Made by a program: the position numbers and the translations under genes
IMG/VR virus record: IMGVR_UViG_3300044641_007115
Location: 62,001-126,000 of that record
Length of the DNA stretch: 64,000 nucleotides
Reading direction: 5' to 3' (one strand)
Part shown: in pieces, positions 1 through 15,384 of the stretch
How the letters are laid out: the number at the start of each line of letters is the position of its first letter
Numbering within the stretch: the stretch's first letter is position 1
The notes under the pieces: model-generated
What the model saw: only the letters and a program-made list of their open reading frames with translations
What the model was told of the DNA's origin: nothing
Database searches by the model: none

Positions 1-572
1 ATGAAGCTATGTCCTTTGCCACCCGGATGGTGTGCGAAGAGATCGGTGGATGCAAGTTCGCATACACCCAAAGCGACGAAGCCAGCTTTCTTGCCACCGA
101 CTACGATACACACGAAACACAGATGTGGTTCGGCGGGAACAAGGCTAAGATCGAAACCATTGCGGCGTCGGCATTCACAGCGTTCTTCAACTACTCCATG
201 ATGAAGATTTCCCCTACTCTCATCGCACAGTTTGATGCCCGCGCCTTCATCATTCCAACACAGCACGAAGTCGTCAACTACTTCATTTGGCGGCAACAGG
301 ATGCCATCCGCAACAGCGTGTCGATGTTGGCCCGTCACCACTTCAGTGCCAAGCGGCTACACAAAGTCTCATCGAAAGATGCTATCGACCTCTTGCGTAA
401 AGAGAAGAAAGTTCGGTGGGAAGAAGATACCCCTGCATGGTTCCGCCGGGGAACTGCCCTCTACAAAAAAGCACCGGGCCGTCACAAAGTCCCAAACTGG
501 TATACTGACAAAAACATCCCGGAGTTCGTCGGGAATCAAAATTTCGTGCGGCAACATATGCCTATCGAATAA
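1..572 (+). CDS. tRNA(His) guanylyltransferase Thg1-like protein (5' part cut by window edge)
   Basis: Thg1/TLP motifs YTQSDE, FDARAF, YFIWRQQDAIRNS, WFRRG. Confidence 0.9.
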   Translation, partial: EAMSFATRMVCEEIGGCKFAYTQSDEASFLATDYDTHETQMWFGGNKAKIETIAASAFTAFFNYSMMKISPTLIAQFDARAFIIPTQHEVVNYFIWRQQDAIRNSVSMLARHHFSAKRLHKVSSKDAIDLLRKEKKVRWEEDTPAWFRRGTALYKKAPGRHKVPNWYTDKNIPEFVGNQNFVRQHMPIE

Positions 573-598
573 AGGAAAGGTGAAACGCCCGTGGTTTT

Positions 599-1441
599 GT
601 GGATTGGTATCGGATCATTTCTGTTAGGGTTGGTCGTAGGATCTGTCATCTGTTTCTTCTACTACCAGAAATCCTTCAGCAAGAAGTTGAAAGGTCTATC
701 AGTTCGTTTTCGCCGCGACTAAATGTCAGCGTGCAACGAATCGACAGACGAATCAAAGGAACTACGATCAATGAACTCTATGCGCCCTATCGGAACGCAT
801 ACGATCTTCTCGAACCGATAAGAGATAGTAGTCTTCGCCCGACCGGTGTATACGACGCCATCATCGCGGATGGTGGCGTCACCAAGAATGGACGCCGGTA
901 CAGCCGCAAGGACTTCCTCAACGCCCAACGTCTATACTTCTCAAACCAGCCTGTCATTGAAGCGGGACAAGATCCTCTTGGCGTCTGCCTTGCCGATGAA
1001 TTCTACCCGGACGGCACGCTACGACTGGATCGCATGATCGGCCAAGTCATCGACATGAAAGTTGTAGACGCGGACAACAGTTGGTATGTGACCATTCGTT
1101 TCGCCATCCATGACATGACCACGCGCGCGAATCCTTGGTACGAAACCATGCAGCCGATCTTCACCAAGCTGCACGGTCACTACAAAGCGATTCCTAGCGG
1201 AATTGTGCCAGACAACTCCGGGGCTATTGTGAACGAGAATGGGGTGGAAGTGGTGACTGGTTTCATGTTGCGGTCGATCATCTTGTCGTGCAACTCCGCA
1301 TTCGAAAAAGCAAACGCGGTTCAGCCGGTATACATGGACGGTGGAAGGATGTCTGCCACCACAACATCCGCGCGCCCGCCGTTGCCACAGCGCCAAACGT
1401 CAATGCAACGCGGGTCAATCTTCGACCGACGACCGATCTAA
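599..1441 (+). CDS. divergent T4 gp21-like prohead protease paralogue, probably inactive
   Basis: TKNGRRYS, EFYP..TLRLDR and NGVEVVTGFML resemble gp21 NRNGRVY, GELxHP..INLDR and G..xV.DF.L; catalytic His and Ser motifs not evident; start uncertain. Confidence 0.5.
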   Translation: MDWYRIISVRVGRRICHLFLLLPEILQQEVERSISSFSPRLNVSVQRIDRRIKGTTINELYAPYRNAYDLLEPIRDSSLRPTGVYDAIIADGGVTKNGRRYSRKDFLNAQRLYFSNQPVIEAGQDPLGVCLADEFYPDGTLRLDRMIGQVIDMKVVDADNSWYVTIRFAIHDMTTRANPWYETMQPIFTKLHGHYKAIPSGIVPDNSGAIVNENGVEVVTGFMLRSIILSCNSAFEKANAVQPVYMDGGRMSATTTSARPPLPQRQTSMQRGSIFDRRPI

Positions 1442-1596
1442 TACGTGACTGTTGCCGTCAACACAGCGGCGGCTATCCAGTATATCGCCCGGCGATAATC
1501 GCCTGAAGCGTAATACCAAACAGCCGCCGCAATGCTCAATCCAATCTGGATTGTTGGGAAAAGTTTCGGTGTGAAAATGATGTCGCGCCAGTTCAT
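1438..1596 (-). CDS. small membrane protein (52 aa, not in ORF track)
   Basis: manual translation MNWRDIIFTPKLFPTIQIGLSIAAAVWYYASGDYRRAIYWIAAAVLTATVTY; abuts upstream gene. Confidence 0.75.
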   Translation of the reverse strand: MNWRDIIFTPKLFPTIQIGLSIAAAVWYYASGDYRRAIYWIAAAVLTATVTY

Positions 1597-1911
1597 TTAG
1601 ACTGCGATTTTCTTACTCATCGCACTCATAATTTTATCGTAACTAGTGAAGGCATCAATTTCCTTTTCGGTCGCCGGACGGACATTCACCTGACCATCCA
1701 CCTTTTGCACCGTGAAGATTCCGCGCGGGTCCTTAAGTTCGACGACTACCGATTGACGTTCCGCCAAAAGCCGGTGAAGCGCCGCCAACATAATTCGCCC
1801 CGTCGCACCCTGATCCAACGCAACGGAAGGTCCACTGTTTGCACTCATTGTCTGTTCTCCTGTTTGCCCAAATTTGGGGTCACCAGTATACTTAGACACA
1901 CTATTCGACAA
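1597..1911 (-). CDS. hypothetical protein
   Basis: ORF tightly coupled to neighbours in a minus-strand run. Confidence 0.6.
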   Translation of the reverse strand: MSNSVSKYTGDPKFGQTGEQTMSANSGPSVALDQGATGRIMLAALHRLLAERQSVVVELKDPRGIFTVQKVDGQVNVRPATEKEIDAFTSYDKIMSAMSKKIAV

Positions 1912-3100
1912 TCAGGCTCATCAGTGACATAGCCGCACGGGTCGTCCCGGCACGCGAAGAAACATAGAAACCGTACTGGCTCCGGGAACTCAGGAAGTCG
2001 CTGTTGACCACGCTGTTGACATCATGCCAATGCACACCGTTCATGGAGATACGGAAGACCCGATCCGCTCCATCGTCTTGGATCTGGAACCAGATCGGCT
2101 GAGCCACCAGACCATACGATGTCGTGAAATATGTCGAGTCAACTGTTGTTTCGTTCGTCCATTTGGTGCCCACCGCACGCAACCATGTGCTTGATCCGAA
2201 GGATGCGCCATAAGTCACAATCCTGCTGTCCGTGCTGTTCCGAAGGAAGATGCCACACTCAGCGGGCGTAGAACCCGTCAGGTATGGATAGAAGGCCGCT
2301 GTGATCTTCCACGGGGCCGCGCTGAGCGATGCTTGCATCAGACGAAGGTTCTCCGACGCTTCCGCCGCCACGGTGTCGATAAACACTCCACCAAGCGAAC
2401 TGGAAGAAACCGCCGATCCGCCTTGGTTGATCCATGAGAACGATCCAAAATTCGGTGTCTCGAACTTCACCAGCGGGCCGAATGATTCGTAGGCAGAACC
2501 CGTTGACCGACGCAAACCGAAACCGGTGCCGGGCAATACCACGCGGCCAGTATTTCCAGTTGCCGGGGAAGGCGCACTTCCATACGCCGTCACGGAAACT
2601 GGATGATCCCACGACCGGCCCGTTGATCCGTCTGTAGACAGGAACCTACCAGCATTGCCACTGGCAGTCGGTAGAAGAGCCGTCACGTCAATCGCAACAC
2701 TGGACGCTGTGGTGATGATACCCTTGGACGACACCTGAACCTGTGCGACCGTCGTGCCGCTTCCATAAGTCGCGCCCGTGACGCCGGAATCGTTTAGATC
2801 GACCGTCGTCTGGTCGTTGCCAGAATCATCCGTCAGAGCGAACCCGGAAGAGAAATTGATCCGGGAACGCTGAGTGAAGGGTGTACCGGCGCGCCGCAAA
2901 GTCTGATATCGAATATCAGTGATATTGGCGATGGTGTGGGTGTGTCCCTCTTTCGACATGGCAAAACCGCCCACTGTCGAGTTGTCGTGAAGGACAAGTG
3001 TCCATTTTGTAGTGTCAACAGTGATTTCGCCAGCCGCGCCGGTAAAGGCGCTGTGGTTCGCAGTTGTACCGCGTCGAAATTGAATCGTGATGCCAGCCAT
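1901..3100 (-). CDS. tail fibre / receptor-binding protein with Mtd_N-like N-terminus
   Basis: N-terminal IQFRRGTTANHSAFTGAAGEITVDT..LHD..TVGG; Ser/Thr/Gly-rich shaft; beta-rich C-terminal domain. Confidence 0.75.
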   Translation of the reverse strand: MAGITIQFRRGTTANHSAFTGAAGEITVDTTKWTLVLHDNSTVGGFAMSKEGHTHTIANITDIRYQTLRRAGTPFTQRSRINFSSGFALTDDSGNDQTTVDLNDSGVTGATYGSGTTVAQVQVSSKGIITTASSVAIDVTALLPTASGNAGRFLSTDGSTGRSWDHPVSVTAYGSAPSPATGNTGRVVLPGTGFGLRRSTGSAYESFGPLVKFETPNFGSFSWINQGGSAVSSSSLGGVFIDTVAAEASENLRLMQASLSAAPWKITAAFYPYLTGSTPAECGIFLRNSTDSRIVTYGASFGSSTWLRAVGTKWTNETTVDSTYFTTSYGLVAQPIWFQIQDDGADRVFRISMNGVHWHDVNSVVNSDFLSSRSQYGFYVSSRAGTTRAAMSLMSLIVE

Positions 3101-3103
3101 GTC

Positions 3104-3361
3104 TTATCGCTCCGTTTGACCGCCCGCGCCCACAATCGGAGCACGCCGGATCATGAATGCGATGGATTCGTCCAGATCCCATACGCCGGGATGACCGACG
3201 ACCAAAGACTGAAGCACACCATTGATCTGATGTTCAAGAGCATCACGCTCCTTGATCCACCGGCGCAAAAGAGTTTGCACAGCGGGTTGAATCGGAAGCT
3301 GGTCGCCTTGTTCGAGTCGGATTTCGGAAGGGGAGTCTTGGTCAACGAAAATAGGTTCCAT
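3104..3361 (-). CDS. hypothetical protein
   Basis: ORF preceded by late-like TCTAAATT 6 nt upstream of ATG. Confidence 0.55.
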   Translation of the reverse strand: MEPIFVDQDSPSEIRLEQGDQLPIQPAVQTLLRRWIKERDALEHQINGVLQSLVVGHPGVWDLDESIAFMIRRAPIVGAGGQTER

Positions 3362-3413
3362 CACTTCAATTTAGACACCACGGAAATGGCATCTTTTGAA
3401 GTGATGGAACCTA

Positions 3414-3632
3414 TTAGACTGGCAGTTGCGATGGTTCGGTCAATTTGGCTTGACACATCATACACGTGTGCTCAACAGCTTGTTCTTCCGTGAACACACG
3501 GCGATACCGGTCCATCGTCACCGGTTCGCCCTTGTGGTTGTTGAACTTGGCGGGCAGACACTTGAAATGCGTGAAACCGCGTTTGGTCAAAGTGCCCGGA
3601 CCACCCAATTCGTAAACCACATGGTATCTCAT
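3414..3632 (-). CDS. hypothetical protein (leaderless start MRYHVVYELGG)
   Basis: ATG 6 nt after a sigma70 -10 element. Confidence 0.6.
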   Translation of the reverse strand: MRYHVVYELGGPGTLTKRGFTHFKCLPAKFNNHKGEPVTMDRYRRVFTEEQAVEHTCMMCQAKLTEPSQLPV

Positions 3633-3638
3633 GACTCC

Positions 3639-3667
3639 ATCATAATGAATCACAAACTATATGTCAA
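3639..3667 (-). promoter_or_regulatory. sigma70-type early promoter TTGACA-17-TATGAT
   Basis: consensus -35 with the phage TTGACATATAG extension. Confidence 0.75.
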
Positions 3668-3906
3668 GCCCCATTTTGGTTGTTGGTGTCGAACTTGATC
3701 CCGATCAGAACTTCGATGCTTTCGATCTTGTGTTTGATCGTTTGCAATTGTTCCGCTACGGACGCCGCGTCCATTTTCACCCACATCCGGCGCAACAACC
3801 GGAACTGATTGTCAATATCGGCAAACAGTTGATCTGCAACGACTCGATTCTCTTCGACGATGTTCAGAAATTTGTTGTGTGGTAATCCTTTATGCGGCAT
3901 GCGCAT
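3664..3906 (-). CDS. hypothetical coiled-coil protein
   Basis: ORF overlaps the stop of the upstream gene. Confidence 0.55.
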   Translation of the reverse strand: MRMPHKGLPHNKFLNIVEENRVVADQLFADIDNQFRLLRRMWVKMDAASVAEQLQTIKHKIESIEVLIGIKFDTNNQNGA

Positions 3907-4666
3907 CGATCCTCAAATGCTTCCTCAAAATGTACCGGGCCAGATCCCGAATGGCTTGCTTATCTGGTTCATCCGGTAGAGAACTTGCGGAAGCTGCTTC
4001 TTTAGATGCTTCTAACAGCCGCAAGATTTCATCCCGGCCTTGCTCATACGTCCACGCGCCTTCGCGGATGGCCTTCAATTCTTCTGCGTCGATCCCGCGC
4101 CGGTCTACCATCAGCACCGCACCATTGCATGAGAAGAACTCTCCGATCATGCGGGCAAGACGAACGGCGTGGTACATGTACTTCGTATCGAAACCGAACT
4201 TGTCACGGATGGCTTTACGCTTGGCACCCATCCGACCAGTCGCCGGGTTGTCTACACCCATCTTCTCAAGCTGGCGGAAAGCGTATCCGGCGAAACTGTC
4301 GATGGCCCTCTTCGAATTGAAAATGCGACGATTTTCGATGAGCACCTGTCCCAACGGGTCAACATGCTCATATTGAGAAACCCACAACAGAGGGATCACG
4401 TTGGGATTGAAATTTTGACAGAGACGCATGAACTTCGTGAGTTCATATGACGTTTCTTCCGACAACAAATTGCCGTCTTCGTCTTTCTCTTTTTTCTCCA
4501 TCGTGCCCTGCGATCCAAACCAGTCGAGTGACAGGTAAACTTGATCGGATGCGGCGACGACTTCCATGAAATCTGTGTCGGATTCCGGTGTCGATGTGCC
4601 ATAAGCATGACTACCGACTTGCGCTCTGATTAGGGTCCTTTCTGGAATTAACTGTGGAACTTGCAT
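3890..4666 (-). CDS. Pol-beta superfamily nucleotidyltransferase (RlaP/YcgL-like)
   Basis: GSHAYGTSTPESDTD motif, NPN, K.MYHAVRL, SSLP..PD. Confidence 0.85.
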   Translation of the reverse strand: MQVPQLIPERTLIRAQVGSHAYGTSTPESDTDFMEVVAASDQVYLSLDWFGSQGTMEKKEKDEDGNLLSEETSYELTKFMRLCQNFNPNVIPLLWVSQYEHVDPLGQVLIENRRIFNSKRAIDSFAGYAFRQLEKMGVDNPATGRMGAKRKAIRDKFGFDTKYMYHAVRLARMIGEFFSCNGAVLMVDRRGIDAEELKAIREGAWTYEQGRDEILRLLEASKEAASASSLPDEPDKQAIRDLARYILRKHLRIDAHAA

Positions 4667-4704
4667 GGGAATATCGAACTAGAGTCCGTATAAACAATCA
4701 TCAC

Positions 4705-5214
4705 ATGGCAAAGAAAACACAACTTTCCTTTTACAAGGTCAATCCCAACGCGGAAGCGCCCGCCTATGGAACCCAAGACTCTGCATGCTTCGATTTCAAA
4801 GCGTGTCTCATCGGTGAACGAGTAAGAGGGTTCGACCGCAACAACAAGGAATTCATCACACCGCTCAGCAACAAAATCGTCATCAATCCCGGCGAACGTG
4901 TTCTGGTCCCGACTGGTTTGATTCTTGACATCCCGGAAGGGTATTCTGTCCGTCTGCACGCCCGTTCCGGGTTGAGTCTCAAGCAAGGTCTGGTCTTAGC
5001 CAATGCGGAAGGCGTCATCGATAGTGACTATGTTGATCCCACGTTCATCATGATTACGAACATGTCCACGGTAATGGCTGACATCAAACACGGCGACCGT
5101 ATCGCACAAGGAGAATTGGTTCCCGTCTACCCGGCAGAGTTCAAGGAAATCAAAGAAGCACCCGGCAAGAAAACTGACCGACAAGGCGGTCTTGGGTCAA
5201 CCGGCGTCAAGTAG
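4705..5214 (+). CDS. dut: trimeric dUTPase
   Basis: motifs ACFD, RSGL, GVIDSDY, RIAQG, RQGGLGSTG. Confidence 0.95.
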   Translation: MAKKTQLSFYKVNPNAEAPAYGTQDSACFDFKACLIGERVRGFDRNNKEFITPLSNKIVINPGERVLVPTGLILDIPEGYSVRLHARSGLSLKQGLVLANAEGVIDSDYVDPTFIMITNMSTVMADIKHGDRIAQGELVPVYPAEFKEIKEAPGKKTDRQGGLGSTGVK

Positions 5215-5220
5215 CCCCGG

Positions 5221-5249
5221 TTGACATATAAGTCGTTCTGTGCTATAAT
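5221..5249 (+). promoter_or_regulatory. perfect sigma70 promoter TTGACA-17-TGnTATAAT, leaderless
   Basis: exact consensus; ATG at 5255. Confidence 0.9.
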
Positions 5250-5254
5250 GGGAT

Positions 5255-5734
5255 ATGCGCCATCTCATCCAGCCCAATTCTAGGACTTGCGGACAAACAT
5301 GCGTTGCGATGGCGGCTGGTATTGACATAGAAGCCGCCATCAAGCTGTTTGGTCACAAACACGGCACCAGCACGCGAAGCATGGTCCGTGTCCTACGTCA
5401 CCTTGGATTCAAACCGGCGGCATGTTTACAAAGGATCACTCCCGACCGGCCCATGCCGAAACGGTCCATTTGCAAGATGCGTTTCCGCCGCCGGGATGGG
5501 CGTGGATGGAAATCCGGGTGGCATTGGGTTCTGATATGGGACGGCGTGTTGTACGATCCGCTTGGTCCTGACTTCGAACACAAAGGGCAGTTCCAACTTT
5601 CCTCATTCTTGGATCTGACCCATCGTACAATAGAGAAGAATGAACTGGAACACAACAAATCTATGGAAGGTCACGTTCGCAACCATCGGCGTCGGCATCT
5701 TCCTGAATGCGATGCACTGGCCGAAAGTCGGTGA
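5255..5734 (+). CDS. C39-like cysteine peptidase
   Basis: Q..TCGQTCVAM, HWVL, YDP. Confidence 0.7.
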   Translation: MRHLIQPNSRTCGQTCVAMAAGIDIEAAIKLFGHKHGTSTRSMVRVLRHLGFKPAACLQRITPDRPMPKRSICKMRFRRRDGRGWKSGWHWVLIWDGVLYDPLGPDFEHKGQFQLSSFLDLTHRTIEKNELEHNKSMEGHVRNHRRRHLPECDALAESR

Positions 5735-5828
5735 ATTCATCGGCATCATCGGCGGCATTGCTTTCATCATAATGTGCTGTGCCCGTTTCGAAGACGTGCA
5801 AAAATTTCTGGACAGAAACAACAAATAG
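5640..5828 (+). CDS. small two-helix membrane protein
   Basis: two hydrophobic segments; overlaps the tail of the previous ORF. Confidence 0.55.
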   Translation: MNWNTTNLWKVTFATIGVGIFLNAMHWPKVGEFIGIIGGIAFIIMCCARFEDVQKFLDRNNK

Positions 5829-5880
5829 CGTCTATATACCTTTCGGATGCCGCATGGCGGGTCCATAGGAGATAGAAACA

Positions 5881-6312
5881 ATGTTCAACAGTCTAGTAAC
5901 TTTCCCTGCCTCTTCAACTCAATGGGGCACCCTTCAAAAAGAAATCTTCGACGCTTTCCGTGACTTCGGTTTCGAGATCATCGGCGGCGATCAGAAGTTC
6001 CCGATCTACAACTGCCGGTACAACGAAGCCAAGGAACTCATCCTTGACTTGGCCGTCGCCGGGTACAGCAAAGATCGCTTGTCCGTCGAACTGGTGGACC
6101 GTGACACGCTGGTAGTCAAGGGAGAGGGTGACACCAACATCTCTTCTGATTTCTTCACCATCCGCAACATCAGCAACAAGAGTTTCACGAAAAGTTTCCG
6201 GCTCTCCCGCGAAGTGGATATCAAATCCGTCACGCTGGAAAACGGAATCCTCAGTGTGACTATGAGTGTGCTTGGTGAGAAGGACAATCGGAAAGTCTTC
6301 AAGCCCGCATAA
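5881..6312 (+). CDS. small heat-shock protein Hsp20
   Basis: P.YN, LAVAGY, FTKSFRL, LENGILSV; AGGAG SD. Confidence 0.9.
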   Translation: MFNSLVTFPASSTQWGTLQKEIFDAFRDFGFEIIGGDQKFPIYNCRYNEAKELILDLAVAGYSKDRLSVELVDRDTLVVKGEGDTNISSDFFTIRNISNKSFTKSFRLSREVDIKSVTLENGILSVTMSVLGEKDNRKVFKPA

Positions 6313-6317
6313 CCCTT

Positions 6318-6350
6318 CGCGCGGGCGTGCTCACGCGGGTGCGCCCGCGC
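6318..6350. terminator. GC-rich hairpin after hsp20
   Basis: gcgcgggcgtgc / gtgcgcccgcgc inverted repeat; no U-tract. Confidence 0.45.
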
Positions 6351-6368
6351 ATCCCATAAATACGTTCG

Positions 6369-7163
6369 ATGCTCAGCTTTCAATCTTTTCTGGCCGAAGT
6401 GTCGAACGCGGAAGCGACCGTAATCAATCTTCTTCGTCTGGCCGATAAACCCGGTACTCCGCAAGAAGGTGCCGTCGCCTTGGCCCAAGCCAAAAAACTG
6501 GCCGCGAAACACGGCTTGAATATCGATGACTTGCGTGCCAAGATGAACGCTCAGCCGCCCCGATCAGCATCCAGCGGCGGATACGATCCACGAAAGAGCG
6601 AAGGTGTGGATGCTGTGTTCGCGATGTGGGAAGCCACCATTCGCGACGCTGATGACCATCATCATGGGTTCCAGTTCACCAAGATGGCCGGTAGTGGTTC
6701 AGACATTTACCGCATCTACAAGAGTTCCAAGTATCCTGATTACGAACTCCGCATCTTCCTCTATCACTTTGAACTGTGGAAGAAAGATCAGGAGATTGCC
6801 AGTGGCACCGGCCACGGTCGAGTAGGCGCATTCCGCATGGTTCTGATTTCGATGGACTACATCAAACGGATCACAGAATGGGCGGAACAAATCCGTACCA
6901 TCGCGGAGAAGGCCGGATACGTGGTCTTCAAAGAACCCGCCGGTCATAACGGATATGAGACATGGTTGCACCACAAAAAGAACAATCGCTTCATCGTGCG
7001 CATCTATGGATACAACACCGACAAAAATGATCGCAGTCGGGGTTCAGCCGTCGCGTTCGATGAGAAGTCCAGTGTACCTATTTTCGCCAAAGCTACAGAA
7101 GACAACCCAAAATCGATCAAGACATTTACCGCCGCTTTGAAAGCCAACAAACCGGTAAAATAG
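6369..7163 (+). CDS. DUF2786-domain protein with capsid-targeting-like N-terminus
   Basis: MLSFQSFLAE; LLRLADKPGTPQEGAVALAQAKKLAAKHGL; late promoter CATAAATA 6 nt upstream. Confidence 0.7.
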   Translation: MLSFQSFLAEVSNAEATVINLLRLADKPGTPQEGAVALAQAKKLAAKHGLNIDDLRAKMNAQPPRSASSGGYDPRKSEGVDAVFAMWEATIRDADDHHHGFQFTKMAGSGSDIYRIYKSSKYPDYELRIFLYHFELWKKDQEIASGTGHGRVGAFRMVLISMDYIKRITEWAEQIRTIAEKAGYVVFKEPAGHNGYETWLHHKKNNRFIVRIYGYNTDKNDRSRGSAVAFDEKSSVPIFAKATEDNPKSIKTFTAALKANKPVK

Positions 7164-7167
7164 AACA

Positions 7168-7482
7168 ATGGAAGGAATCACGACCGATTACTACGATTGC
7201 TCCTGTCACTCTTCGGACCACACGTTGCGGTTCACGCTACACGAAGAGCACATGGGAGACGAACCGGGACTGTACAGTGAAGTACAACTTCAACAATACC
7301 GCCCGTGGTATACGCGCATTTGGCCCGCAATCAAATACATCTTTGGTTACGAATGCCGGTATGGTCATTGGGATTGTTTCCTCTTCGAAAAGGAAACCGC
7401 CATCCGCATGCGCGACTTACTCAACCGGTATCTGAAAATGCTCGAAGAGCACGAAGCTAAGACTTCGCAAGGATCTGATTGA
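7168..7482 (+). CDS. hypothetical phage protein
   Basis: CxCxxxxH near N-terminus; coupled ORF. Confidence 0.7.
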   Translation: MEGITTDYYDCSCHSSDHTLRFTLHEEHMGDEPGLYSEVQLQQYRPWYTRIWPAIKYIFGYECRYGHWDCFLFEKETAIRMRDLLNRYLKMLEEHEAKTSQGSD

Positions 7483-7825
7483 TTTTCTCTTTGTAATTCT
7501 CCACCGGCAAAACGTGAATTGGAACGTGTTCCGTATCCACCATTTTCCAATGGCGTCCCCAATTGTATTGTTTGAAGTTGTGCCCGCGAACAATCTGACC
7601 ACGATTGACTTTGACTAAGCCAATCTTCTCCATCTTCAGAATGCTCTTCAATTCGTTCTTGTTCGCGCCGGGGACATATCCCTCTTTGTCTTTCTTCGAT
7701 ACCGCAACGATCTGCCTGAACAGCTTGGCGTCGTTGACATTGAACACGACACCGCCGGGCAACCGAATTTCCTTCCGTTCCTTTGGTTTGTCTTCCGCTT
7801 CGTTAAAGGCTTGAAAAGATTTCAT
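7457..7825 (-). CDS. putative internal head protein
   Basis: N-terminus MKSFQAFNE resembles T4 capsid-targeting sequence. Confidence 0.65.
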   Translation of the reverse strand: MKSFQAFNEAEDKPKERKEIRLPGGVVFNVNDAKLFRQIVAVSKKDKEGYVPGANKNELKSILKMEKIGLVKVNRGQIVRGHNFKQYNWGRHWKMVDTEHVPIHVLPVENYKEKINQILAKS

Positions 7826-7827
7826 CA

Positions 7828-9339
7828 CTAATCCTTCGGATCGTTGAATTTGTTCTTGAACTGGTTCATCGCCTTCAGAAGTTCTTCAGCGGTATGGCCG
7901 TCTTTCAACGTCAGCGTGCTGTTGCTACCCATACCCATATTCCAATGTTTCTGAAGTGACCAGCGGCCCGTTTTCGGATCAACCACGGCGAAATACTTGC
8001 CGCCTTTGCTGCTGAAATACTCTTTCGTCGGATCGGGCCGATCCAACACTTTGTCGTCCGGGCGGAATCCGAACTGGCCCAAGATGTTGACGATCTTGTC
8101 GAAACCCATTTCGGCTTTCTTCATCAATGCTGATAGCGACCGCTCTAAGGTGTCGGCATCCTTACCCTGTGCTTTGTCACCCAACAGAGATTTGATGTCG
8201 TGGGCGGGCCGCATACCGCCGCCGGGACCCTCTTTACGGACGAACTCAGCCGTAATCATCCACCAGACTTCATCGTCTTTCTTCATCGCGCCGCGCATCT
8301 TGTTCGGACCAAACATGACCCGAAGCATTTCCACGGTGTTTGTCCAGATGTGCTGATTGCCTTGTTTGTCGAAGGGACGGAATCCGAAACTGGTCAACAC
8401 CTTGACCATGTTGTTGATTTCGTTGTGAACCGAGAACGCGGCTTCTCCGCTCTTTCTCTTTGTTGTCACCCACTTCTCAAAAGATTGTGGTCCTTTGTTC
8501 TTCTGGTCGAAACGCTTTGTGTCCAGTTTCCACTTGTTCGAAGCGCTTCCACCCTGACGGGTTTCGTGCCACCAAGCACCATCCGGCCCGACAATCAGCC
8601 GGTATGGATCACTGACCATTTCGCGGTACGATTCTCCCGTGTTGGCGGGTTTCAAAACATATCCGTGCTTCTCTGCGACTCGAACAACAGCTTCAGCTTC
8701 AGCGGTCAGCTTTTGAGCGTTGTTGTATGCCTTCTGTTCCTTTTCCCGTTGTTCCGCTTCCCGTTTGACTCTCAACCCCTTCCAGTCCACGGAGCGAAGC
8801 GCACCGATCAAATCCTGTGCGTTTGTACTCTTGGCAAGCACGTCATCCTTCGAATAACCGCCCGGACGACCGGTCGGGTCGGCATGGACCAAATACCACA
8901 TGATCGGACGTTCTCTTTCATTCTGGATGGGGAGAACAACCAACACAAAGGTTCCCTCATGAGATACACCCCACACAACAACTTCGGAACCGAACTGAGC
9001 ATAGGTGGTCCCGGAACGCATCCGTTCCCCTTTCCCTTTATGGCGGGCACCGGGGACATGACTCATGATGGTGTTGATTTCGATGAACAGCCGGTCAGCC
9101 GGATGAGTAGACGCGGAATTCGACGGCGACCGGCGCACGCTCTGTTGCTTCATCATCGACCGGGCGACTTCCAGATCGATATTGTTCTTTTTCGCTAGTG
9201 CGGTGGCTTGCGCTAAAGCGACTTCGCCTTCGTGGGGAGATCCGGGACGATCAGCAAGCGCCAATAGCTTGATGATGGTGTCCATCGCGTCCCGTTCGCT
9301 CAGAAGTTGTTCACGAAGATAGGTCAGAAAGCCACTCAT
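7828..9339 (-). CDS. DUF2786-domain protein with repeated C-terminal modules, putative internal protein
   Basis: IIKLLALADRPGSPHEGEVALAQATALAKKNNI; late promoter GGTAAATA 6 nt upstream of ATG. Confidence 0.7.
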   Translation of the reverse strand: MSGFLTYLREQLLSERDAMDTIIKLLALADRPGSPHEGEVALAQATALAKKNNIDLEVARSMMKQQSVRRSPSNSASTHPADRLFIEINTIMSHVPGARHKGKGERMRSGTTYAQFGSEVVVWGVSHEGTFVLVVLPIQNERERPIMWYLVHADPTGRPGGYSKDDVLAKSTNAQDLIGALRSVDWKGLRVKREAEQREKEQKAYNNAQKLTAEAEAVVRVAEKHGYVLKPANTGESYREMVSDPYRLIVGPDGAWWHETRQGGSASNKWKLDTKRFDQKNKGPQSFEKWVTTKRKSGEAAFSVHNEINNMVKVLTSFGFRPFDKQGNQHIWTNTVEMLRVMFGPNKMRGAMKKDDEVWWMITAEFVRKEGPGGGMRPAHDIKSLLGDKAQGKDADTLERSLSALMKKAEMGFDKIVNILGQFGFRPDDKVLDRPDPTKEYFSSKGGKYFAVVDPKTGRWSLQKHWNMGMGSNSTLTLKDGHTAEELLKAMNQFKNKFNDPKD

Positions 9340-9368
9340 AGTAGCTATTTACCATTTCCGGGAACAGT

Positions 9369-9680
9369 TCAGGCTACGGTCCAGACATCCCGCTGATGGT
9401 AGTAATTGCCAATCGCGGACAGAACCGGAGTCAATTCCTTCCGAAGTGATGAAAGATTTACCGACTCCCGGACATCCAGTGTTACGTCCACGATAGCGAT
9501 CTGTGATGTCGTTGGACTCCGATCAATCCACGGGCCGGGCACACGGAACTTCCGTCGAACGAAATTTCCATACCCCCGGTCAAACTTTCCGATGTAGACA
9601 GTCGCATACGGATCAGTCGGTTTTGAAAGAACTGGAATCGCCGCGACGATTGGCAGAGCGAACAATTGCCGTCGTGTCAT
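9369..9680 (-). CDS. hypothetical protein with twin-arginine-like signal (MTRRQLFAL)
   Basis: true start likely 9680, 5 nt after TCTAAGTA. Confidence 0.55.
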   Translation of the reverse strand: MTRRQLFALPIVAAIPVLSKPTDPYATVYIGKFDRGYGNFVRRKFRVPGPWIDRSPTTSQIAIVDVTLDVRESVNLSSLRKELTPVLSAIGNYYHQRDVWTVA

Positions 9681-9699
9681 ATTGCTACTTAGATTAACG

Positions 9700-9825
9700 C
9701 AGGGGCGTGACATCCGGCTTAGCGTACCGGAAATGAAGACTGCCATCGCGCGTCAGGCAATCTAACGTCGGACTGTTGATGGAATGTCCGCGCACCGGTT
9801 GATCGATCACTCAATCAACCACCTG
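9700..9825 (-). ncRNA. candidate structured ncRNA downstream of Ro60 (possible non-canonical Y RNA)
   Basis: own late-like promoter GATAAACT (9838-9831); four hairpins with G-U pairs favouring the minus strand; CAGG/CCUG end pairing. Confidence 0.55.
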
Positions 9826-9855
9826 AGATCAGTTTATCATGATCCCGGTCGGCTG

Positions 9856-9888
9856 AAAAACAAAAAGGCCGGACCCGAAGGCCCGGCC
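9856..9888 (-). terminator. intrinsic terminator GGCCGGGCC-TTCG-GGTCCGGCC-TTTTT
   Basis: stem, UUCG loop and U-tract; identical copies at 50286 and 60557. Confidence 0.9.
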
Positions 9889-9907
9889 AGTTTTGTTCCC
9901 CGCCTGT

Positions 9908-11566
9908 TTAGGCGGTCGTGACTTCCGTTTCGTCTTCCGATCCCGAACGGCGGCTGGTGCCACCGCGCATGAAATCGGCCAACAGAACCGGCACGTTGGC
10001 GTCGAAACCAACGAAGTCCATCATACCCATATCCTTCGGATCGGCGATGGAGAACGGCGTCGCCGCCGTTGCGATGACGGCCAGCTTCGCGTTCGGCTTA
10101 TTCCGTTCCTTGCGGTACTTCACAAGCGCTTGCGACGGCTGGATGCTACCGGCCCAAGTTTCGTTGTCCGTGATTACCGTGAAGCAATCGACGTTCAAGT
10201 TGTTCTTGATGCCGTAGATCATCGGCAACGAACAATCCGTACCGCCGCCAAGACCGCGATTCGCCTTCTTCGTTGCCGATTCCAGCGTATCCTTGGCAGT
10301 GATCTTGAGATCGACGAACTGCGTGTCGAACCCACGGATGTCGTAGTTCTGTTCCGTGCGGATGAATACCATCGCTTGCGCGGCGGCAATCATCGCGTGG
10401 GTCAGAGCCGTACCATTCCAACTCATCGTCATCGAACCCGAAAGGTCGATGCCCACCAAAAGGTTCTGTCCGGTCGGCTCCACGTTGGCGAAGGTTCCGT
10501 AGAACGCATCCATCAACGCATCGACAACCGCCGGAACCACCGTCCACGAACCGTTACCACGCTGACCGTGACCGGCACCATAGGTACCGTAGGCCAGCAA
10601 CACCTGAAGCGGGTGGACCCGCGACCGGCGCAAGTATTCGGCATCGCGCAACCGGCTGGCGACCAGCTTGGAAGCATCAGACAGCGGGGCCAACAGGCCA
10701 GACTTCGACATGTTGCCCAAGTTGCGGATCATCGCAGTCAGCGGCATCTTTTGCAAGAGCGCTTCCTGAACCGTCGCGTCGTTGAGGAACTGAGTCGGAA
10801 TCATTTCGCGCGTCAAACCGTAGTCGGACACGATCTTGATGACTTCCTTGGCCGAAGTTGCCTTCTTTGCCAACTCAACGCCGTCGATCACGCGGGACAC
10901 GTCCGGCTTGTACTCACCCTTGGCCGCGTAACGGTAGATCGCGGAGCGAACTTCGTCTTCCGGCTTCGGGTGCGCCAAACGGAGAATGTCGCGCTGTGCC
11001 CATCCTTCACGCTGTTGGTACTTCGCCAACTGGTAGGCCAGATCGCGGGGCGACTTGGCAGAATACCAGTCCTTCACAGCACGGGCCAGAACAGCACCCC
11101 AACCGCGAAGCGAAGTTGCGTAGGAAATGAACGAAAACAGATGCGTGCCCGTGCGCGCGACCACCGGCAACTTGGACGCCGCGTACTGGCGCGTCTCAAT
11201 GACCGGGGAGTCGGTCGGGGACATGGCAAGTGCCAGCGCAAACAACGCCGGATCGTTCTTCGGTGCCCGGCCCGCGTCGCTGATGCCAGCGATCACATCG
11301 ACCGTGCGCTTACCGTCTTCCTTCAGACAGGCGATCACGTTCTTCGCGTGTTCGCGGGTCAGCTTTTCCGCCGAACCACCACTTGCGTAGTAGGCCGGGT
11401 TCTCAGACCCAAGGATCAGGAAGCGCTCCAAGAGCGTCCACTTATCGACGGTGAAAACGAATCCACCGTGGGCGTTCTGCGCCATTTCATTCTCACGTCC
11501 CGGAATCGGCTGATTCTGCGGGGTCGTCTTCCGGCTTGCGCCGTGCAAGCTATAGATGTTTGCCAT
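9908..11566 (-). CDS. rsr: Ro60 / TROVE-domain RNA-binding protein (Rsr orthologue)
   Basis: NAHGGFVF, LERFLILGSE, RTGTHLF, KYQQREGW, ALIRNLG-like AMIRNLG, RVHP, vWA DLSGSM, GGTDCSLPM, ITDNETW, DFVGFDA; start M8 after AAGAGG. Confidence 0.95.
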   Translation of the reverse strand: MANIYSLHGASRKTTPQNQPIPGRENEMAQNAHGGFVFTVDKWTLLERFLILGSENPAYYASGGSAEKLTREHAKNVIACLKEDGKRTVDVIAGISDAGRAPKNDPALFALALAMSPTDSPVIETRQYAASKLPVVARTGTHLFSFISYATSLRGWGAVLARAVKDWYSAKSPRDLAYQLAKYQQREGWAQRDILRLAHPKPEDEVRSAIYRYAAKGEYKPDVSRVIDGVELAKKATSAKEVIKIVSDYGLTREMIPTQFLNDATVQEALLQKMPLTAMIRNLGNMSKSGLLAPLSDASKLVASRLRDAEYLRRSRVHPLQVLLAYGTYGAGHGQRGNGSWTVVPAVVDALMDAFYGTFANVEPTGQNLLVGIDLSGSMTMSWNGTALTHAMIAAAQAMVFIRTEQNYDIRGFDTQFVDLKITAKDTLESATKKANRGLGGGTDCSLPMIYGIKNNLNVDCFTVITDNETWAGSIQPSQALVKYRKERNKPNAKLAVIATAATPFSIADPKDMGMMDFVGFDANVPVLLADFMRGGTSRRSGSEDETEVTTA

Positions 11567-11604
11567 GTTATTTTGACCTCTTTTCAAACACTACACCGTG
11601 TTAA

Positions 11605-12276
11605 CTACTCCTGTTCATCTTCCAAACTACGCATCACGTCTTCGAAAGGCACCAGTTCGGCCCGGCCTTCTTCCACTTCATTGATGCGTTCCTTCATCTC
11701 TGCCAGAAACTCTTCGTTCTCTTTAGGACCGCCGTGAAAGCTGATATCCCAATAGATTCCTTCCAGAAATTCCAACAGACTGAGAACTCTTTTGCCGCTG
11801 AGAATTGATTCCGTCCAGTTCCGGCGGATCGTAAACGTCTCATCGATCACAACCGGGATATGCGCCAACTGGTACATCGGTGAGTACGAAACCGACCAAC
11901 GTTCTCCTTGCGCATCCACTCCAATGAAGTCCGTCGAAATGTTGAAATCATTCGTGCCATCATGCTCGAAAACTTCACCGTAGGAACTGACAACCAATTT
12001 GACCAGCGATTCTTCCAGATCCTTACGTGGCTCACGGGCCTGTGCATGGAATTCATCGATTGCCCCACACCATGCATAATGTGCAACAACTTCCTTGAGA
12101 GTCGGATGTTGATCCACAATCGCAAAAATCTGACCCAAAGTCACGCCGTCGTCAACCTTAACCCGAACTCGAAGATCGGTCAGGCGAAACGGCTTTTCGA
12201 CGTAATCCTTCTTTTCCTTTCCATCCCACTCATACGCCGCTAGGCGGTCGCTGTGGAACACAACGTAATCACTCAT
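11605..12276 (-). CDS. hypothetical phage protein
   Basis: 223-aa ORF in operon with Ro60. Confidence 0.75.
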   Translation of the reverse strand: MSDYVVFHSDRLAAYEWDGKEKKDYVEKPFRLTDLRVRVKVDDGVTLGQIFAIVDQHPTLKEVVAHYAWCGAIDEFHAQAREPRKDLEESLVKLVVSSYGEVFEHDGTNDFNISTDFIGVDAQGERWSVSYSPMYQLAHIPVVIDETFTIRRNWTESILSGKRVLSLLEFLEGIYWDISFHGGPKENEEFLAEMKERINEVEEGRAELVPFEDVMRSLEDEQE

Positions 12277-12713
12277 GTTGGTTCGTATATCTCCAGCCCC
12301 GGTATGAAACCAAGGGAATCCACAATCATGGGTCTAACGACAGACCATTGAAGTCCGCCTAAGCCACAACCGATGGCCGGGATCGCAAGACTCGAAATCT
12401 CATGATCCTTGCACCAGTCAACAAGGACCACCAGACCAGCTTCAATCCACTCTATCTTCGAGGGGTTTCGCCAATGATCCTTGGTCGCAAAGCAGACGAC
12501 CCATTTTGGCGGTGGGGTGGTGTCATGCTGAGGCAACACGATGATGTTGCCCGGAAAAAGCGTTTTTGGTTCAGCACAAGCATGACGATATGAATTTAGC
12601 ACACCCGGAAACCGATTTGCAAACTTTTTTGCAAGACCGGCTCCCATCACTCCCACACAGTTCACCGGGTTGACCCAAACCTGTGCTTGGGACCGGAACA
12701 TATCGCCCGGCAC
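12273..12713 (-). CDS. macrodomain ADP-ribosylglycohydrolase (DarG/TARG1-like)
   Basis: GD.F, NPVNCVGVMGAGLA, FATKDHWR, IPAIGCGLGGL. Confidence 0.9.
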   Translation of the reverse strand: MPGDMFRSQAQVWVNPVNCVGVMGAGLAKKFANRFPGVLNSYRHACAEPKTLFPGNIIVLPQHDTTPPPKWVVCFATKDHWRNPSKIEWIEAGLVVLVDWCKDHEISSLAIPAIGCGLGGLQWSVVRPMIVDSLGFIPGLEIYEPT

Positions 12714-12717
12714 CGGA

Positions 12718-13137
12718 TCACTCCAATTCCTTCAACTGTTTCAACAACTCTTGCCGCTTCCGTTCCTTCTCAGATTCATCCGGGCGTGACGGCATCGACA
12801 GCACGCGGAAATCGGTTACCCAAACACCCGCGTCGCCGCTACATGGTCCGCTGAAATTCGACTTCGTGTAGGTGACTTCAATTTCCTGTTGATCTTCCAT
12901 CACCTTCAGCAACCGCTTGTAGAGAGCTTCGTCTTTGACGCTGAAATGAAACGCGGACCCATTTACTCCACTACCGCCATTGAATCCGCCCCGGACCAGT
13001 TCACCTTCATAGGTGTCACAGACCATTCCATACTGGCCCATCTTAACCACTTGGCCGATCTTCTTGCCGTCGCCGCTTTTGATGCCATAGCCACAACCGA
13101 CCAAGAACAATCCCATCAACACAAGAACGTATCGCAT
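12718..13137 (-). CDS. phage lipoprotein
   Basis: signal peptide with lipobox LVGC; G.VVK..TYEGEL..FHFSV. Confidence 0.75.
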   Translation of the reverse strand: MRYVLVLMGLFLVGCGYGIKSGDGKKIGQVVKMGQYGMVCDTYEGELVRGGFNGGSGVNGSAFHFSVKDEALYKRLLKVMEDQQEIEVTYTKSNFSGPCSGDAGVWVTDFRVLSMPSRPDESEKERKRQELLKQLKELE

Positions 13138-13170
13138 ACATCCATTGTCTATCCGATACCACAGCGCACA

Positions 13171-13209
13171 AAAACAAAAACGCCCCGGCGGAACTCACCG
13201 GGGCGTTTT
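13171..13209 (-). terminator. intrinsic (bidirectional) terminator
   Basis: aaaacgccccgg / ccggggcgtttt. Confidence 0.85.
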
Positions 13210-13235
13210 GTCGTCGGGAACCAGTCCCAACTCTA

Positions 13236-13559: not shown

Positions 13560-13561
13560 TC

Positions 13562-14230: not shown

Positions 14231-14266
14231 GCTCCTTTCCTTGGGTGCATCTTGCCACCCCTATGT

Positions 14267-14446: not shown

Positions 14447-14474
14447 GACCTTCTCCCAACCCCTAAAATGAACT

Positions 14475-15369: not shown

Positions 15370-15384
15370 GTGATGGATTTAGAC

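What the first reader, a model, noticed from the sequence alone, without database searches (positions are those of the whole stretch)
1..12713. Dispersed RNA-repair toolkit: Thg1-like, RlaP-type nucleotidyltransferase, Ro60 and macrodomain
Seen: all four genes lie within 13 kb. Established: Thg1-like proteins repair tRNA 5' ends by 3'-5' polymerisation, and RlaP and Ro60 associate with RNA ligase/repair operons. No RtcB or Rnl ligase is visible in this window. Inference: a counter-measure to tRNA-cleaving abortive-infection systems.
Basis: partly seen in the sequence, partly recalled or inferred. Interest (0 to 1): 0.6.

Follow-up and report, generated by a model that had tools for sequence, protein, structure and literature searches.

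The report
Ligase-less phage RNA-care genes, plus anti-DarT
The four genes are really there in a large freshwater T4-like phage, but they are separate accessory genes rather than one tRNA-repair machine: two mend RNA ends, one (Ro60) pairs with about ten small Y RNAs hidden among the phage's tRNA genes, and the macrodomain is a known type of counter-defence against DNA ADP-ribosylation.

Summary
Observation confirmed. A bacterial-type Thg1-like protein (TLP), an RlaP nucleotidyltransferase, a full-length Ro60/Rsr and a macrodomain lie within 13 kb. The 224-kb, about 96% complete phage genome has no RtcB, Rnl1 or Rnl2 ligase.

Interpretation partly supported. The genes sit in three transcription units on both strands, mixed with tail-fibre, dUTPase, Hsp20 and lipoprotein genes. 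Only close relatives keep all four. Among 12 distant Ro60 phage records, Thg1 occurs in 1, RlaP in 3 and Macro in 0. Among 35 large TLP records, Ro60 occurs in 3-4 and RlaP in 14-15.

The macrodomain is DarG-type and 36% identical to PhiKZ AdfM, a proven DarT2 antagonist that acts on DNA. TLP, RlaP and a distant CCA-adding/HD enzyme can heal RNA ends but cannot reseal cut anticodon loops.

New here: the phage carries about ten YrlA-like Y RNAs, none near Ro60. All lie in its tRNA islands, 33-137 kb away. Three are tRNA-shaped, with an acceptor stem and an encoded CCA end. Their motif forms arrays beside Ro60 in other phages and forms no arrays in Ro60-less ones.

The gene repertoire itself was described for jumbo phages in 2021. 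I rate this a new variant of a known kind, of moderate interest.

The parts
1..572 (+). Thg1-like protein (TLP, bacterial type), 3' part. The full 241-aa ORF starts 153 nt before the window.
   Evidence: Pfam Thg1/Thg1C and phrog_4717. PDB best match is 4KGK, the B. thuringiensis TLP, at E=3.6e-53 over residues 3-237, against about 1e-12 for eukaryotic Thg1. The RIDG and SDE carboxylate motifs align.
599..1441 (+). 280-aa protein of unknown function, directly after TLP on the same strand.
   Evidence: No Pfam, PHROG, NCBIfam or PADLOC hit. Kept next to TLP only in L011-L014. Absent from 76 other TLP loci.
3890..4666 (-). RlaP-family Pol-beta nucleotidyltransferase.
   Evidence: PF10127 E=1.1e-16 and phrog_388 E=2.5e-44. 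The GS...DxD motif is present (G17 S18 ... D29 T D31). It is the only copy in the genome. It is a distant relative of T4 NrdC.11.
9867..9888 (-). Intrinsic terminator that closes the Ro60 operon.
   Evidence: 9-bp stem with 8 G-C pairs plus a T-run. Conserved in L012 and L109.
9908..11587 (-). Ro60/Rsr orthologue (TROVE ring plus vWA domain with a MIDAS motif).
   Evidence: Pfam. NCBIfam Rsr E=8e-138. End-to-end alignment to D. radiodurans Rsr (2NVO, E=6e-107) and to vertebrate Ro60; the DxSGS motif is conserved.
11605..12276 (-). 223-aa protein of unknown function between Macro and Ro60.
   Evidence: No family hit. 29 metagenomic homologues. AlphaFold pLDDT 93.5 but no PDB fold match. The Macro-u223-Ro60 order is kept in L109. 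More distant homologues sit next to a Pif1 helicase, without Ro60 or Macro.
12273..12713 (-). Stand-alone DarG-type macrodomain (AdfM-like).
   Evidence: PADLOC DarG E=1.1e-49. NCBIfam antitoxin_DarG E=5.6e-51, covering only the macro half. PDB best matches are 5M3I and 5M31, which I recognise from my own knowledge, not from a paper read here, as the DarG macrodomains of M. tuberculosis and T. aquaticus. 36% identity, E=1e-27, to PhiKZ gp104 (AdfM); the Asn aligned with AdfM N23 is kept.
12718..13137 (-). 139-aa lipoprotein, first gene of the operon.
   Evidence: Signal peptide with lipobox LVGC. Weak OB-like fold.
13177..13209 (-). Intrinsic terminator upstream of the operon. It separates the operon from the vWA-containing unit.
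   Evidence: 14-bp stem plus a T-run.
13562..14230 (-). Stand-alone vWA protein in the upstream transcription unit.
   Evidence: Pfam VWA/VWA_2 (weak) and phrog_7371 E=1e-40. Homologues lie within a few kb of Ro60 in 5 of 12 distant Ro60 loci.

Best explanation
This is not one system. It is the accessory-gene region of a freshwater T4-like jumbo phage and holds at least three independent functions.

1. TLP (3'-5' templated polymerase) and RlaP (adds one or two nucleotides to RNA 3' ends). With a CCA-adding/HD enzyme and a small AAA_33 kinase encoded elsewhere, they form a ligase-free RNA-end maintenance set. Its most likely job is to keep the acceptor ends of the phage's roughly 35-40 tRNAs, of host tRNAs and of tRNA-shaped Y RNAs intact. 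(Enzyme classes are shown by homology. Substrates are inferred.)

2. Ro60 is the protein half of a Ro60-Y RNA particle. Its RNA partners are about ten YrlA-like genes embedded in the three tRNA islands. By analogy with Thermus phage phiLo, the particle probably docks on host PNPase and alters RNA decay. (The RNA family and its link to Ro60 are shown by comparative evidence. Binding and effect are inferred.)

3. The macrodomain is an AdfM-like orphan DarG. It most likely strips DarT2-made ADP-ribose from phage DNA. (Inferred from 36% identity to the tested PhiKZ enzyme.)

The Macro and Ro60 genes share an operon with a lipoprotein and an unknown protein. I read this as co-expression of accessory genes, not a pathway.
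For: Gene identities.

Three transcription units on two strands, with strong terminators bracketing u139-Macro-u223-Ro60. The first operon gene is a lipoprotein.

No RtcB, Rnl1, Rnl2 or KptA in the genome. A CCA-adding enzyme with an HD domain at genome 172453-173895 and an AAA_33 kinase at 206554-207033, neither with a ligase neighbour.

Co-occurrence: 12 distant Ro60 records: Thg1 in 1, RlaP in 3, Macro in 0; 35 TLP records: TROVE in 3-4, RlaP in 14-15. RlaP lies within 10 kb of TLP in 10 of 76 loci.

Y RNAs:
- The motif GCCG-N7-11-GGTTATC occurs 11 times against 0.7 in shuffles. Ten copies lie in the tRNA islands, on the tRNA strand.
- Two or more same-strand hits occur in 9 of 16 Ro60-positive records and 0 of 32 Ro60-negative records, Fisher P=7e-6. 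The arrays lie 60-900 nt from Ro60 on its strand.
- A perfect 7-bp terminal helix is present in 23 of 37 elements against 16% in the control, P=2e-10.
- Compensatory changes occur in the terminal helix and the T arm.
- Genome 130932-131061 folds into the YrlA layout of V, T, AS and D arms.

Published function: AdfM, PMC13309987. RlaP, bioRxiv 10.64898/2025.12.29.696909. phiLo Ro60-Yrl-PNPase, PMC12135203.
Against: - All four genes stay together in the close relatives. The L099/L106 lineage packs RlaP, CCA, Pnk-phosphatase-Rnl1, a DarG-like macrodomain and TLP into one cassette, so a functional link between these families is plausible in some phages.
- RlaP lies within 10 kb of TLP more often than random placement would give.
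- A host RtcB could supply the missing ligase. The host is unknown.
- No expression data exist, because only DNA runs from lake-water metagenomes hold the sequence.
- The Y RNAs score far below the Rfam YrlA threshold (23 bits against 69).
- No binding or activity was tested.
Confidence: 0.6

Rival explanations
1. The four genes work together as an anti-abortive-infection tRNA repair kit. RlaP and TLP restore nucleotides lost at cleaved ends, Ro60 holds the damaged tRNA, the macrodomain clears ADP-ribose by-products, and a host ligase such as RtcB seals the break.
For: The concept is published for jumbo phages (PMC7824862). RlaP restores function of over-trimmed tRNA in vitro. The L099/L106 cassette joins the same families to a Pnk-phosphatase-Rnl1 fusion. 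Synteny is kept in close relatives.
Against: - No ligase in the genome.
- PMC7824862 states that RlaP distribution in jumbo phages mirrors that of the ligases; that does not hold here.
- Three transcription units with unrelated genes between them.
- The macrodomain is DarG/AdfM-type, whose shown substrate is DNA. There is no KptA to make the ADP-ribose by-product.
- Ro60 and Macro rarely accompany TLP or RlaP.
Confidence: 0.2
2. The Macro-u223-Ro60 operon is a functional unit acting on ADP-ribosylated RNA. The macrodomain removes ADP-ribose put on RNA by host RNA-targeting ADP-ribosyltransferases, while Ro60 with its Y RNAs captures the modified or misfolded RNA.
For: The tight operon is bracketed by terminators. 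The Macro-u223-Ro60 order is conserved down to a relative whose u223 homologue is 52% identical. A DarG-like macrodomain also lies near RNA-repair genes in L099. From my own knowledge, TARG1/DarG-class macrodomains can remove ADP-ribose from nucleic-acid ends.
Against: - None of 12 distant Ro60 phage records has any Macro gene.
- The operon starts with a lipoprotein.
- u223 relatives occur without Ro60 or Macro.
- The nearest tested enzyme, AdfM, acts on DNA.
Confidence: 0.1
3. The set is housekeeping only. TLP, RlaP, the CCA enzyme and Ro60 mature and quality-control the phage's own unusual tRNA and Y RNA transcripts, with no role in conflict with host defences.
For: There are about 35-40 tRNA genes, a tmRNA and about ten Y RNAs, including tRNA-shaped ones with encoded CCA. 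Ro60 is classically an RNA quality-control factor.
Against: Host enzymes normally suffice for tRNA maturation. Many phages with large tRNA sets lack TLP or Ro60. The phiLo work points to interference with host PNPase.
Confidence: 0.1

Closest known systems
Jumbo-phage RNA-repair repertoire (Iyer, Anantharaman, Krishnan, Burroughs & Aravind 2021, PMC7824862; Burroughs & Aravind 2016)
   Same: The same families are listed there as phage counter-measures: RlaP, the CCA-adding enzyme, Thg1, ROT/TROVE (Ro60), Macro, and many tRNAs.
   Different: In that survey RlaP tracks the RNA ligases. This phage has RlaP, TLP, CCA and Ro60 but no ligase. Its Macro is the DarG type.
Phage T4 Pnkp plus Rnl1 heal-and-seal repair of PrrC-cut tRNA-Lys
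   Same: Both are T4-like phages, both act on tRNA, and T4 also carries an RlaP member (NrdC.11).
   Different: No Rnl1, Rnl2 or Pnkp phosphatase-ligase is found here. Only a stand-alone AAA_33 kinase is present.
L099/L106 viral contigs (IMG/VR): RlaP-CCA-[kinase+Metallophos+Rnl1]-macro-TLP cassette
   Same: The same four enzyme families, with 30-40% identity to the window's proteins.
   Different: There they form one co-directional 8-kb cassette with a ligase, flanked by NAD-salvage genes. Here they are dispersed, have no ligase, and Ro60 is added.
PhiKZ AdfM (gp104), a DarG2-like anti-DarT factor (PMC13309987)
   Same: A stand-alone macrodomain of about 150 aa, 36% identical, with the catalytic Asn kept and no DarT-binding C-terminal domain.
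   Different: It is encoded by a T4-like phage, not a nucleus-forming chimallivirus. It is co-transcribed with Ro60. Its activity is untested.
Bacillus thuringiensis Thg1-like protein (PDB 4KGK)
   Same: Full-length alignment at E=3.6e-53; bacterial TLP clade.
   Different: It is phage-encoded. The phage has no convincing tRNA-His gene: the ARAGORN call at genome 132149-132227 is poor and Rfam does not call it.
Ro60-Y RNA particles: Salmonella rsr-yrlBA-rtcBA, D. radiodurans Rsr-Yrn1-PNPase, Thermus phage phiLo Ro60-Yrl1/2 (PMC4201824, PMC12135203)
   Same: A full-length Ro60. RNAs with the GNCGA... and YUAY motifs, a terminal helix, and V, T, AS and D arms.
   Different: Published Y RNAs were defined as lying within 4 kb of Ro60. 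Here none is within 33 kb, and all sit in tRNA islands. Three have tRNA gene order, with an open acceptor stem, an encoded CCA end, and the Ro-binding stem closed by a GNRA loop.

Membership tests
Thg1/TLP (PF04446 plus PF14413) | Thg1 catalytic domain scoring above the Pfam cut-off | tested here: met
   102.9 bits against a cut-off of 29.2 on the full ORF.
Thg1/TLP (PF04446 plus PF14413) | Bacterial TLP clade rather than eukaryotic tRNA-His-specific Thg1 | tested here: met
   4KGK (BtTLP) at E=3.6e-53, against 3WBZ and 3OTB at about 1e-12.
Thg1/TLP (PF04446 plus PF14413) | 3'-5' nucleotide addition on tRNA | not testable with these tools
   Needs an enzyme assay.
RlaP (PF10127) | Pfam match above the cut-off, with the Pol-beta GS...DxD motif | tested here: met
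   61.7 bits against a cut-off of 23, but only profile positions 19-158 of 249. G17 S18 ... D29 x D31 present.
RlaP (PF10127) | Genomic association with an RNA ligase (the origin of the family name) | tested here: not met
   No RtcB, PF09414 or PF09511 anywhere in the genome.
Ro60/Rsr | TROVE HEAT-repeat ring plus a vWA domain with MIDAS, full length | tested here: met
Ro60/Rsr | A Y RNA encoded within 4 kb on the same strand | tested here: not met
   No Rfam hit at E<=10 in window 1-16000. No motif in non-coding DNA near Ro60. The Y RNA present after Ro60 in relative L109 is absent from the window and L012.
Ro60/Rsr | Y RNA partners encoded somewhere in the genome | tested here: met
   About ten elements in the tRNA islands. 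Physical binding was not tested.
YrlA-type Y RNA (RF02553) | GNCGAAN0-1G-like motif near the 5' end, and YUAY about 20 nt downstream | tested here: met
   GCCGA/GCCGT/GCCGG followed by GG-TTAT-C. The motif is enriched 16-fold over shuffles.
YrlA-type Y RNA (RF02553) | T arm, acceptor-like hairpin and D arm in that order, inside a terminal helix | tested here: met
   Met for genome 130932-131061 and 137392-137540. Other copies are shorter or have tRNA gene order.
YrlA-type Y RNA (RF02553) | Rfam gathering score of 69 bits | tested here: not met
   The best score is 23.4 bits.
DarG/AdfM macrodomain | DarG-type macrodomain with the catalytic Asn and Lys | tested here: met
   PADLOC E=1e-49 and NCBIfam E=6e-51. 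N18 aligns with AdfM N23. The Lys of the 'ATK' motif aligns with 'PTK' of DarG.
DarG/AdfM macrodomain | C-terminal DarT-binding domain of the full DarG antitoxin | tested here: not met
   The 146-aa protein covers only profile positions 6-149 of 338 and scores 173.8 bits against the 250-bit cut-off. AdfM has the same architecture.
DarG/AdfM macrodomain | Removes DarT2 ADP-ribose from ssDNA | not testable with these tools
   Needs an enzyme assay and a toxicity-rescue assay.
RNA repair operon or cassette (RtcB- or Pnkp/Rnl-centred) | A ligase together with end-healing enzymes in one transcription unit | tested here: not met
   Contrast with L099.

The most novel reading that the evidence does not exclude
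This phage has moved its Y RNA genes away from Ro60 and multiplied them inside its tRNA islands. Some have become true tRNA-shaped molecules, with an open acceptor stem, an encoded CCA end, and the Ro60-binding stem in place of or beside the anticodon arm. These chimeras would be handled by tRNA enzymes (RNase P, the CCA enzyme, TLP, perhaps synthetases). They would let Ro60 be tethered to the tRNA-handling or decay machinery. TLP, RlaP, CCA and Ro60 would then be linked through a shared substrate class (tRNA-like acceptor ends) rather than through ligation.
Probability: 0.2. Interest if true: 0.7.

Novelty: new variant of a known kind. Interest (0 to 1): 0.45.

Why it matters
First, co-location of 'RNA-repair' families in a phage should not be read as a heal-and-seal system unless a ligase is present. 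A macrodomain should be sub-typed before it is assigned to RNA metabolism, because here it is an anti-DarT factor.

Second, Y RNAs have been searched for only next to Ro60. Finding about ten of them among tRNA genes, some mis-called as tRNAs by ARAGORN, suggests that phage Y RNA repertoires are under-counted. It also gives a simple motif for finding them. The tRNA-order copies give a direct way to test why bacterial Y RNAs mimic tRNA.

Tried and rejected
- Rfam at gathering thresholds on the whole genome, and at E<=10 or E<=0.5 on window 1-16000 and the tRNA islands: no Y RNA family reported.
- A possible Y RNA directly after Ro60 (window about 9765-9857, 'CAGCCGACC...GATAAAC'): rejected. The motif is not kept in L012, and the alignment to L109 shows that the true Y RNA there is missing here. 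The region keeps a hairpin with two pair-preserving changes and is more likely a promoter and 5' UTR.
- The 244-nt 'gap' at 14231-14474 holds a conserved small ORF, not an RNA.
- u223: no family, no Atlas feature hit, and no fold match despite a confident model. The Atlas structure library was not available.
- u139: only a weak OB-like match.
- DGR hypothesis for the Mtd_N-like tail fibre gene: no template repeat in the genome.
- A search of the cultured-phage collection with the 13-kb DNA found nothing similar.
- Expression: no RNA run holds the sequence.
- tRNA-His as the TLP substrate: the only ARAGORN call is poor and Rfam does not support it.
- No baseline frequency of the four families in size-matched phages was computed, so enrichment of the TLP-RlaP pair is judged only against random placement.
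Full report
**Where the window lies.** The window is bases 62001-126000 of a 224,490-bp IMG/VR virus record that CheckV estimates to be 96% complete. The rest of the window carries a T4-type replication and nucleotide module:
- helicase, SbcCD, a family-B DNA polymerase (40% identical to those of cyanomyoviruses), ribonucleotide reductase, NAMPT and a CobS-like ATPase.

The sequence occurs only in DNA runs of lake-water metagenomes. No cultured phage has similar DNA. The genome has about 35-40 tRNA genes in three islands (34.8-39.2 kb on the minus strand; 129.8-138.4 kb and 209-212 kb on the plus strand) and a permuted tmRNA. The window itself has no tRNA.

**Observation.** All four genes are real.
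- The Thg1 gene is cut by the window start. Its full ORF is 241 aa.
- The genome has no RtcB, Rnl2-type (PF09414) or Rnl1-type (PF09511) ligase, and no KptA.
- Elsewhere it encodes a CCA-adding enzyme with an HD domain (genome 172453-173895, minus strand) and a 159-aa AAA_33 kinase (206554-207033, minus strand). Neither has a ligase as a neighbour.

**Anatomy.** The 15 kb holds several transcription units.
- TLP and a 280-aa unknown protein are on the plus strand.
- RlaP is on the minus strand, upstream of small ORFs and an Mtd_N-type tail-fibre gene. It is divergent from a dUTPase.
- A consensus sigma-70 promoter at 5221-5249 precedes the plus-strand genes that include the Hsp20 and DUF2786 genes.
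- Two strong intrinsic terminators (13209-13177 and 9888-9867, minus strand) bracket a four-gene operon: u139, Macro, u223, Ro60.
- u139 is a lipoprotein with the lipobox LVGC. u223 has a confident predicted fold with no known relative.

The four genes of the finding therefore lie in three units on two strands, among unrelated genes.

**What each gene is.**
- **TLP.** It belongs to the bacterial Thg1-like clade. It matches the B. thuringiensis TLP (4KGK) at E=3.6e-53 over its full length, against about 1e-12 for eukaryotic Thg1. From established knowledge of this family, TLPs extend 5'-truncated tRNAs in a templated 3'-5' reaction. The phage has no convincing tRNA-His gene.
- **RlaP.** It has the Pol-beta motif. 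Relatives occur in 579 cultured phage records, including T4 NrdC.11. Pseudomonas RlaPs add one or two NMPs to RNA 3'-OH ends and help restore over-trimmed tRNA.
- **Ro60.** It aligns end to end with D. radiodurans Rsr and with vertebrate Ro60, and its MIDAS motif is intact.
- **Macrodomain.** It is of the DarG type. It matches PADLOC DarG at 1e-49 and NCBIfam antitoxin_DarG at 6e-51 over the macro half only. Its best PDB matches are 5M3I and 5M31, which I recognise from my own knowledge as DarG macrodomains. It is 36% identical (E=1e-27) to PhiKZ gp104, with the catalytic Asn kept. That protein, AdfM, removes DarT2 ADP-ribose from DNA and rescues DarT2 toxicity (PMC13309987). The best-supported role for the window's macrodomain is therefore counter-defence on DNA, not RNA repair.

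- Close relatives (L011-L014) keep all four genes in order. A more distant relative (L109; its u223 homologue is 52% identical) keeps Macro-u223-Ro60.
- In 12 more distant Ro60-bearing viral records, Thg1 occurs in 1, RlaP in 3 (two of these records are near-duplicates) and Macro in 0.
- In 35 large TLP-bearing records, TROVE occurs in 3-4 and RlaP in 14-15.
- Within 10 kb of TLP in 76 loci, RlaP occurs in 10, a CCA enzyme in 8, and Macro in 3.
- So TLP, RlaP and CCA tend to share a neighbourhood, while Ro60 and Macro do not.
- One lineage (L099/L106) has a true cassette, all on one strand: PRPP synthetase, NAMPT, HTH, RlaP, CCA, a kinase-Metallophos-Rnl1 fusion, a DarG-like macrodomain, GP88, TLP and NAD synthase. 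That shows what a complete heal-and-seal version looks like, and what is missing here.

**Where are the Y RNAs?** Published bacterial and phage Y RNAs (YrlA) lie within 4 kb of Ro60 on the same strand. They carry a GNCGAAN0-1G motif, a YUAY about 20 nt further on, and V, T, AS and D arms (PMC4201824).

Nothing of this kind lies near Ro60 in the window. In L109 a 62-nt Y RNA follows Ro60, but that segment is missing from the window and from L012.

Other Ro60 phage loci showed odd 118-128-nt 'tRNA' hits right next to Ro60. They led to the shared motif GCCG-N7-11-GGTTATC. The evidence for this motif as a Y RNA signature is as follows.
- In this genome it occurs 11 times against 0.7 in shuffles (maximum 4). 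Ten copies lie in the tRNA islands, on the tRNA strand.
- Across 48 other viral records, two or more same-strand copies occur in 9 of 16 Ro60-positive records and in 0 of 32 Ro60-negative records (Fisher P=7e-6). The arrays lie 60-900 nt from Ro60 on its strand.
- The 7 nt before the motif pair perfectly with a 7-mer 45-190 nt downstream in 23 of 37 elements, against 16% for shuffled 7-mers (P=2e-10). There are 31 different helix sequences.
- RNAalifold keeps the terminal helix and the T arm with compensatory changes in an alignment that includes genome 130932-131061.
- That element folds, with MFE equal to centroid and z=-2.6, into terminal helix, V, T, AS and D arms. This is the YrlA layout. 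Genome 137392-137540 is similar.

Three further elements have tRNA gene order: 131365-131496, 131504-131628 and 38001-38099 (minus strand). Each has a 7-bp acceptor stem, a discriminator base plus CCA, D and T arms, and the motif-bearing stem closed by a GNRA tetraloop. Similar tRNA-order copies sit next to Ro60 in L018/L019, L021 and L022.

The Rfam YrlA model scores these elements at only 23 bits or less. ARAGORN mis-calls two of them, as tRNA-Cys (130925-131002) and as 'tRNA-???' (209412-209500).

I therefore conclude that Ro60 has cognate RNAs in this phage and that they are dispersed 33-137 kb from the gene. Binding is inferred, not shown.

**Mechanism.** The only experimentally studied phage Ro60 (Thermus phage phiLo) binds phage Y-like RNAs and host PNPase and dampens PNPase activity (PMC12135203). 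I take that as the most likely mode here. TLP, RlaP, the CCA/HD enzyme and the kinase can heal 5' and 3' ends but cannot join two halves. Without a ligase, the phage alone cannot reverse anticodon-loop cleavage. A host RtcB could do so, but the host is unknown.

**Comparison and novelty.** The repertoire (RlaP, CCA enzyme, Thg1, TROVE, Macro, many tRNAs) was described for jumbo phages in 2021 (PMC7824862). AdfM-type macrodomains were described in 2026. Three things differ here:
- the absence of any ligase despite the presence of RlaP;
- the co-transcription of an AdfM-like gene with Ro60;
- the relocation and multiplication of Y RNA genes in the tRNA islands, including tRNA-order forms.

**Verdict.**
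- Observation: confirmed.
- Interpretation: partly supported.
- Novelty: new variant of a known kind.
- Interest: 0.45.

Noticed in passing
L020:10407-10724 (IMGVR_UViG_3300018031_000005, 168.6 kb, direct terminal repeats): A phage-encoded bacterial class A RNase P RNA (RF00010, 165.7 bits) lies inside a dense tRNA array. The array is a few kb from Ro60 and three Y RNA motifs.
   Followed up: no
L099:540-11558 (and the near-identical L106): A one-strand cassette of PRPP synthetase, NAMPT, HTH, RlaP, CCA enzyme, a 735-aa AAA_33 kinase + Metallophos + Rnl1 ligase fusion, a DarG-like macrodomain, GP88, TLP and NAD synthase. RNA repair and NAD salvage genes are interleaved.
   Followed up: partly
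Phage genome 130925-131002, 209412-209500 and 132149-132227 (outside the window): The ARAGORN calls for tRNA-Cys and 'tRNA-???' are parts of Y RNA-like elements. The tRNA-His call has a mismatched acceptor stem and Rfam does not support it.
   Followed up: partly
window 1901-3100 (-): A tail-fibre-like protein with an Mtd_N (major tropism determinant) N-terminal domain. No template repeat exists anywhere in the genome, so it is not a diversity-generating retroelement target here.
   Followed up: yes
window 11605-12276 (-): u223 has a very confident predicted fold (pLDDT 93.5) but no match in the PDB (best Z 3.2). The family is conserved in T4-like metagenomic phages, often after a Pif1 helicase and near aminoacyl-tRNA synthetase genes.
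   Followed up: partly
window 13562-14230 (-): Homologues of this stand-alone vWA protein lie within a few kb of Ro60 in 5 of 12 distant Ro60 phage loci (L016, L017, L020, L021, L026). This may be a recurrent partner of Ro60, or of the CobS-like ATPase at 27998-29179.
   Followed up: no
window 9747-9860 (-): A conserved non-coding stretch lies after the Ro60 terminator. It has a 10-bp hairpin and a second helix that keeps pairing through two substitutions in L012. It is probably the promoter and 5' UTR of the next gene, which has a Tat-like or lipoprotein-like N-terminus.
   Followed up: partly
window 3350-3415 and 5221-5249: An 18-bp perfect hairpin lies between two minus-strand genes. A perfect TTGACA-17-TATAAT promoter with an extended TG lies ahead of the plus-strand genes that include the Hsp20 gene.
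   Followed up: no
window 34857-36245 (+): A NAMPT (NAD salvage) gene lies in the same window as the DarG-type macrodomain. Both fit an NAD/ADP-ribose conflict theme.
   Followed up: no
window 14231-14474 (-): An unannotated conserved ORF of about 59 aa (MDRDLIQAEID...) fills what looks like an intergenic gap.
   Followed up: partly
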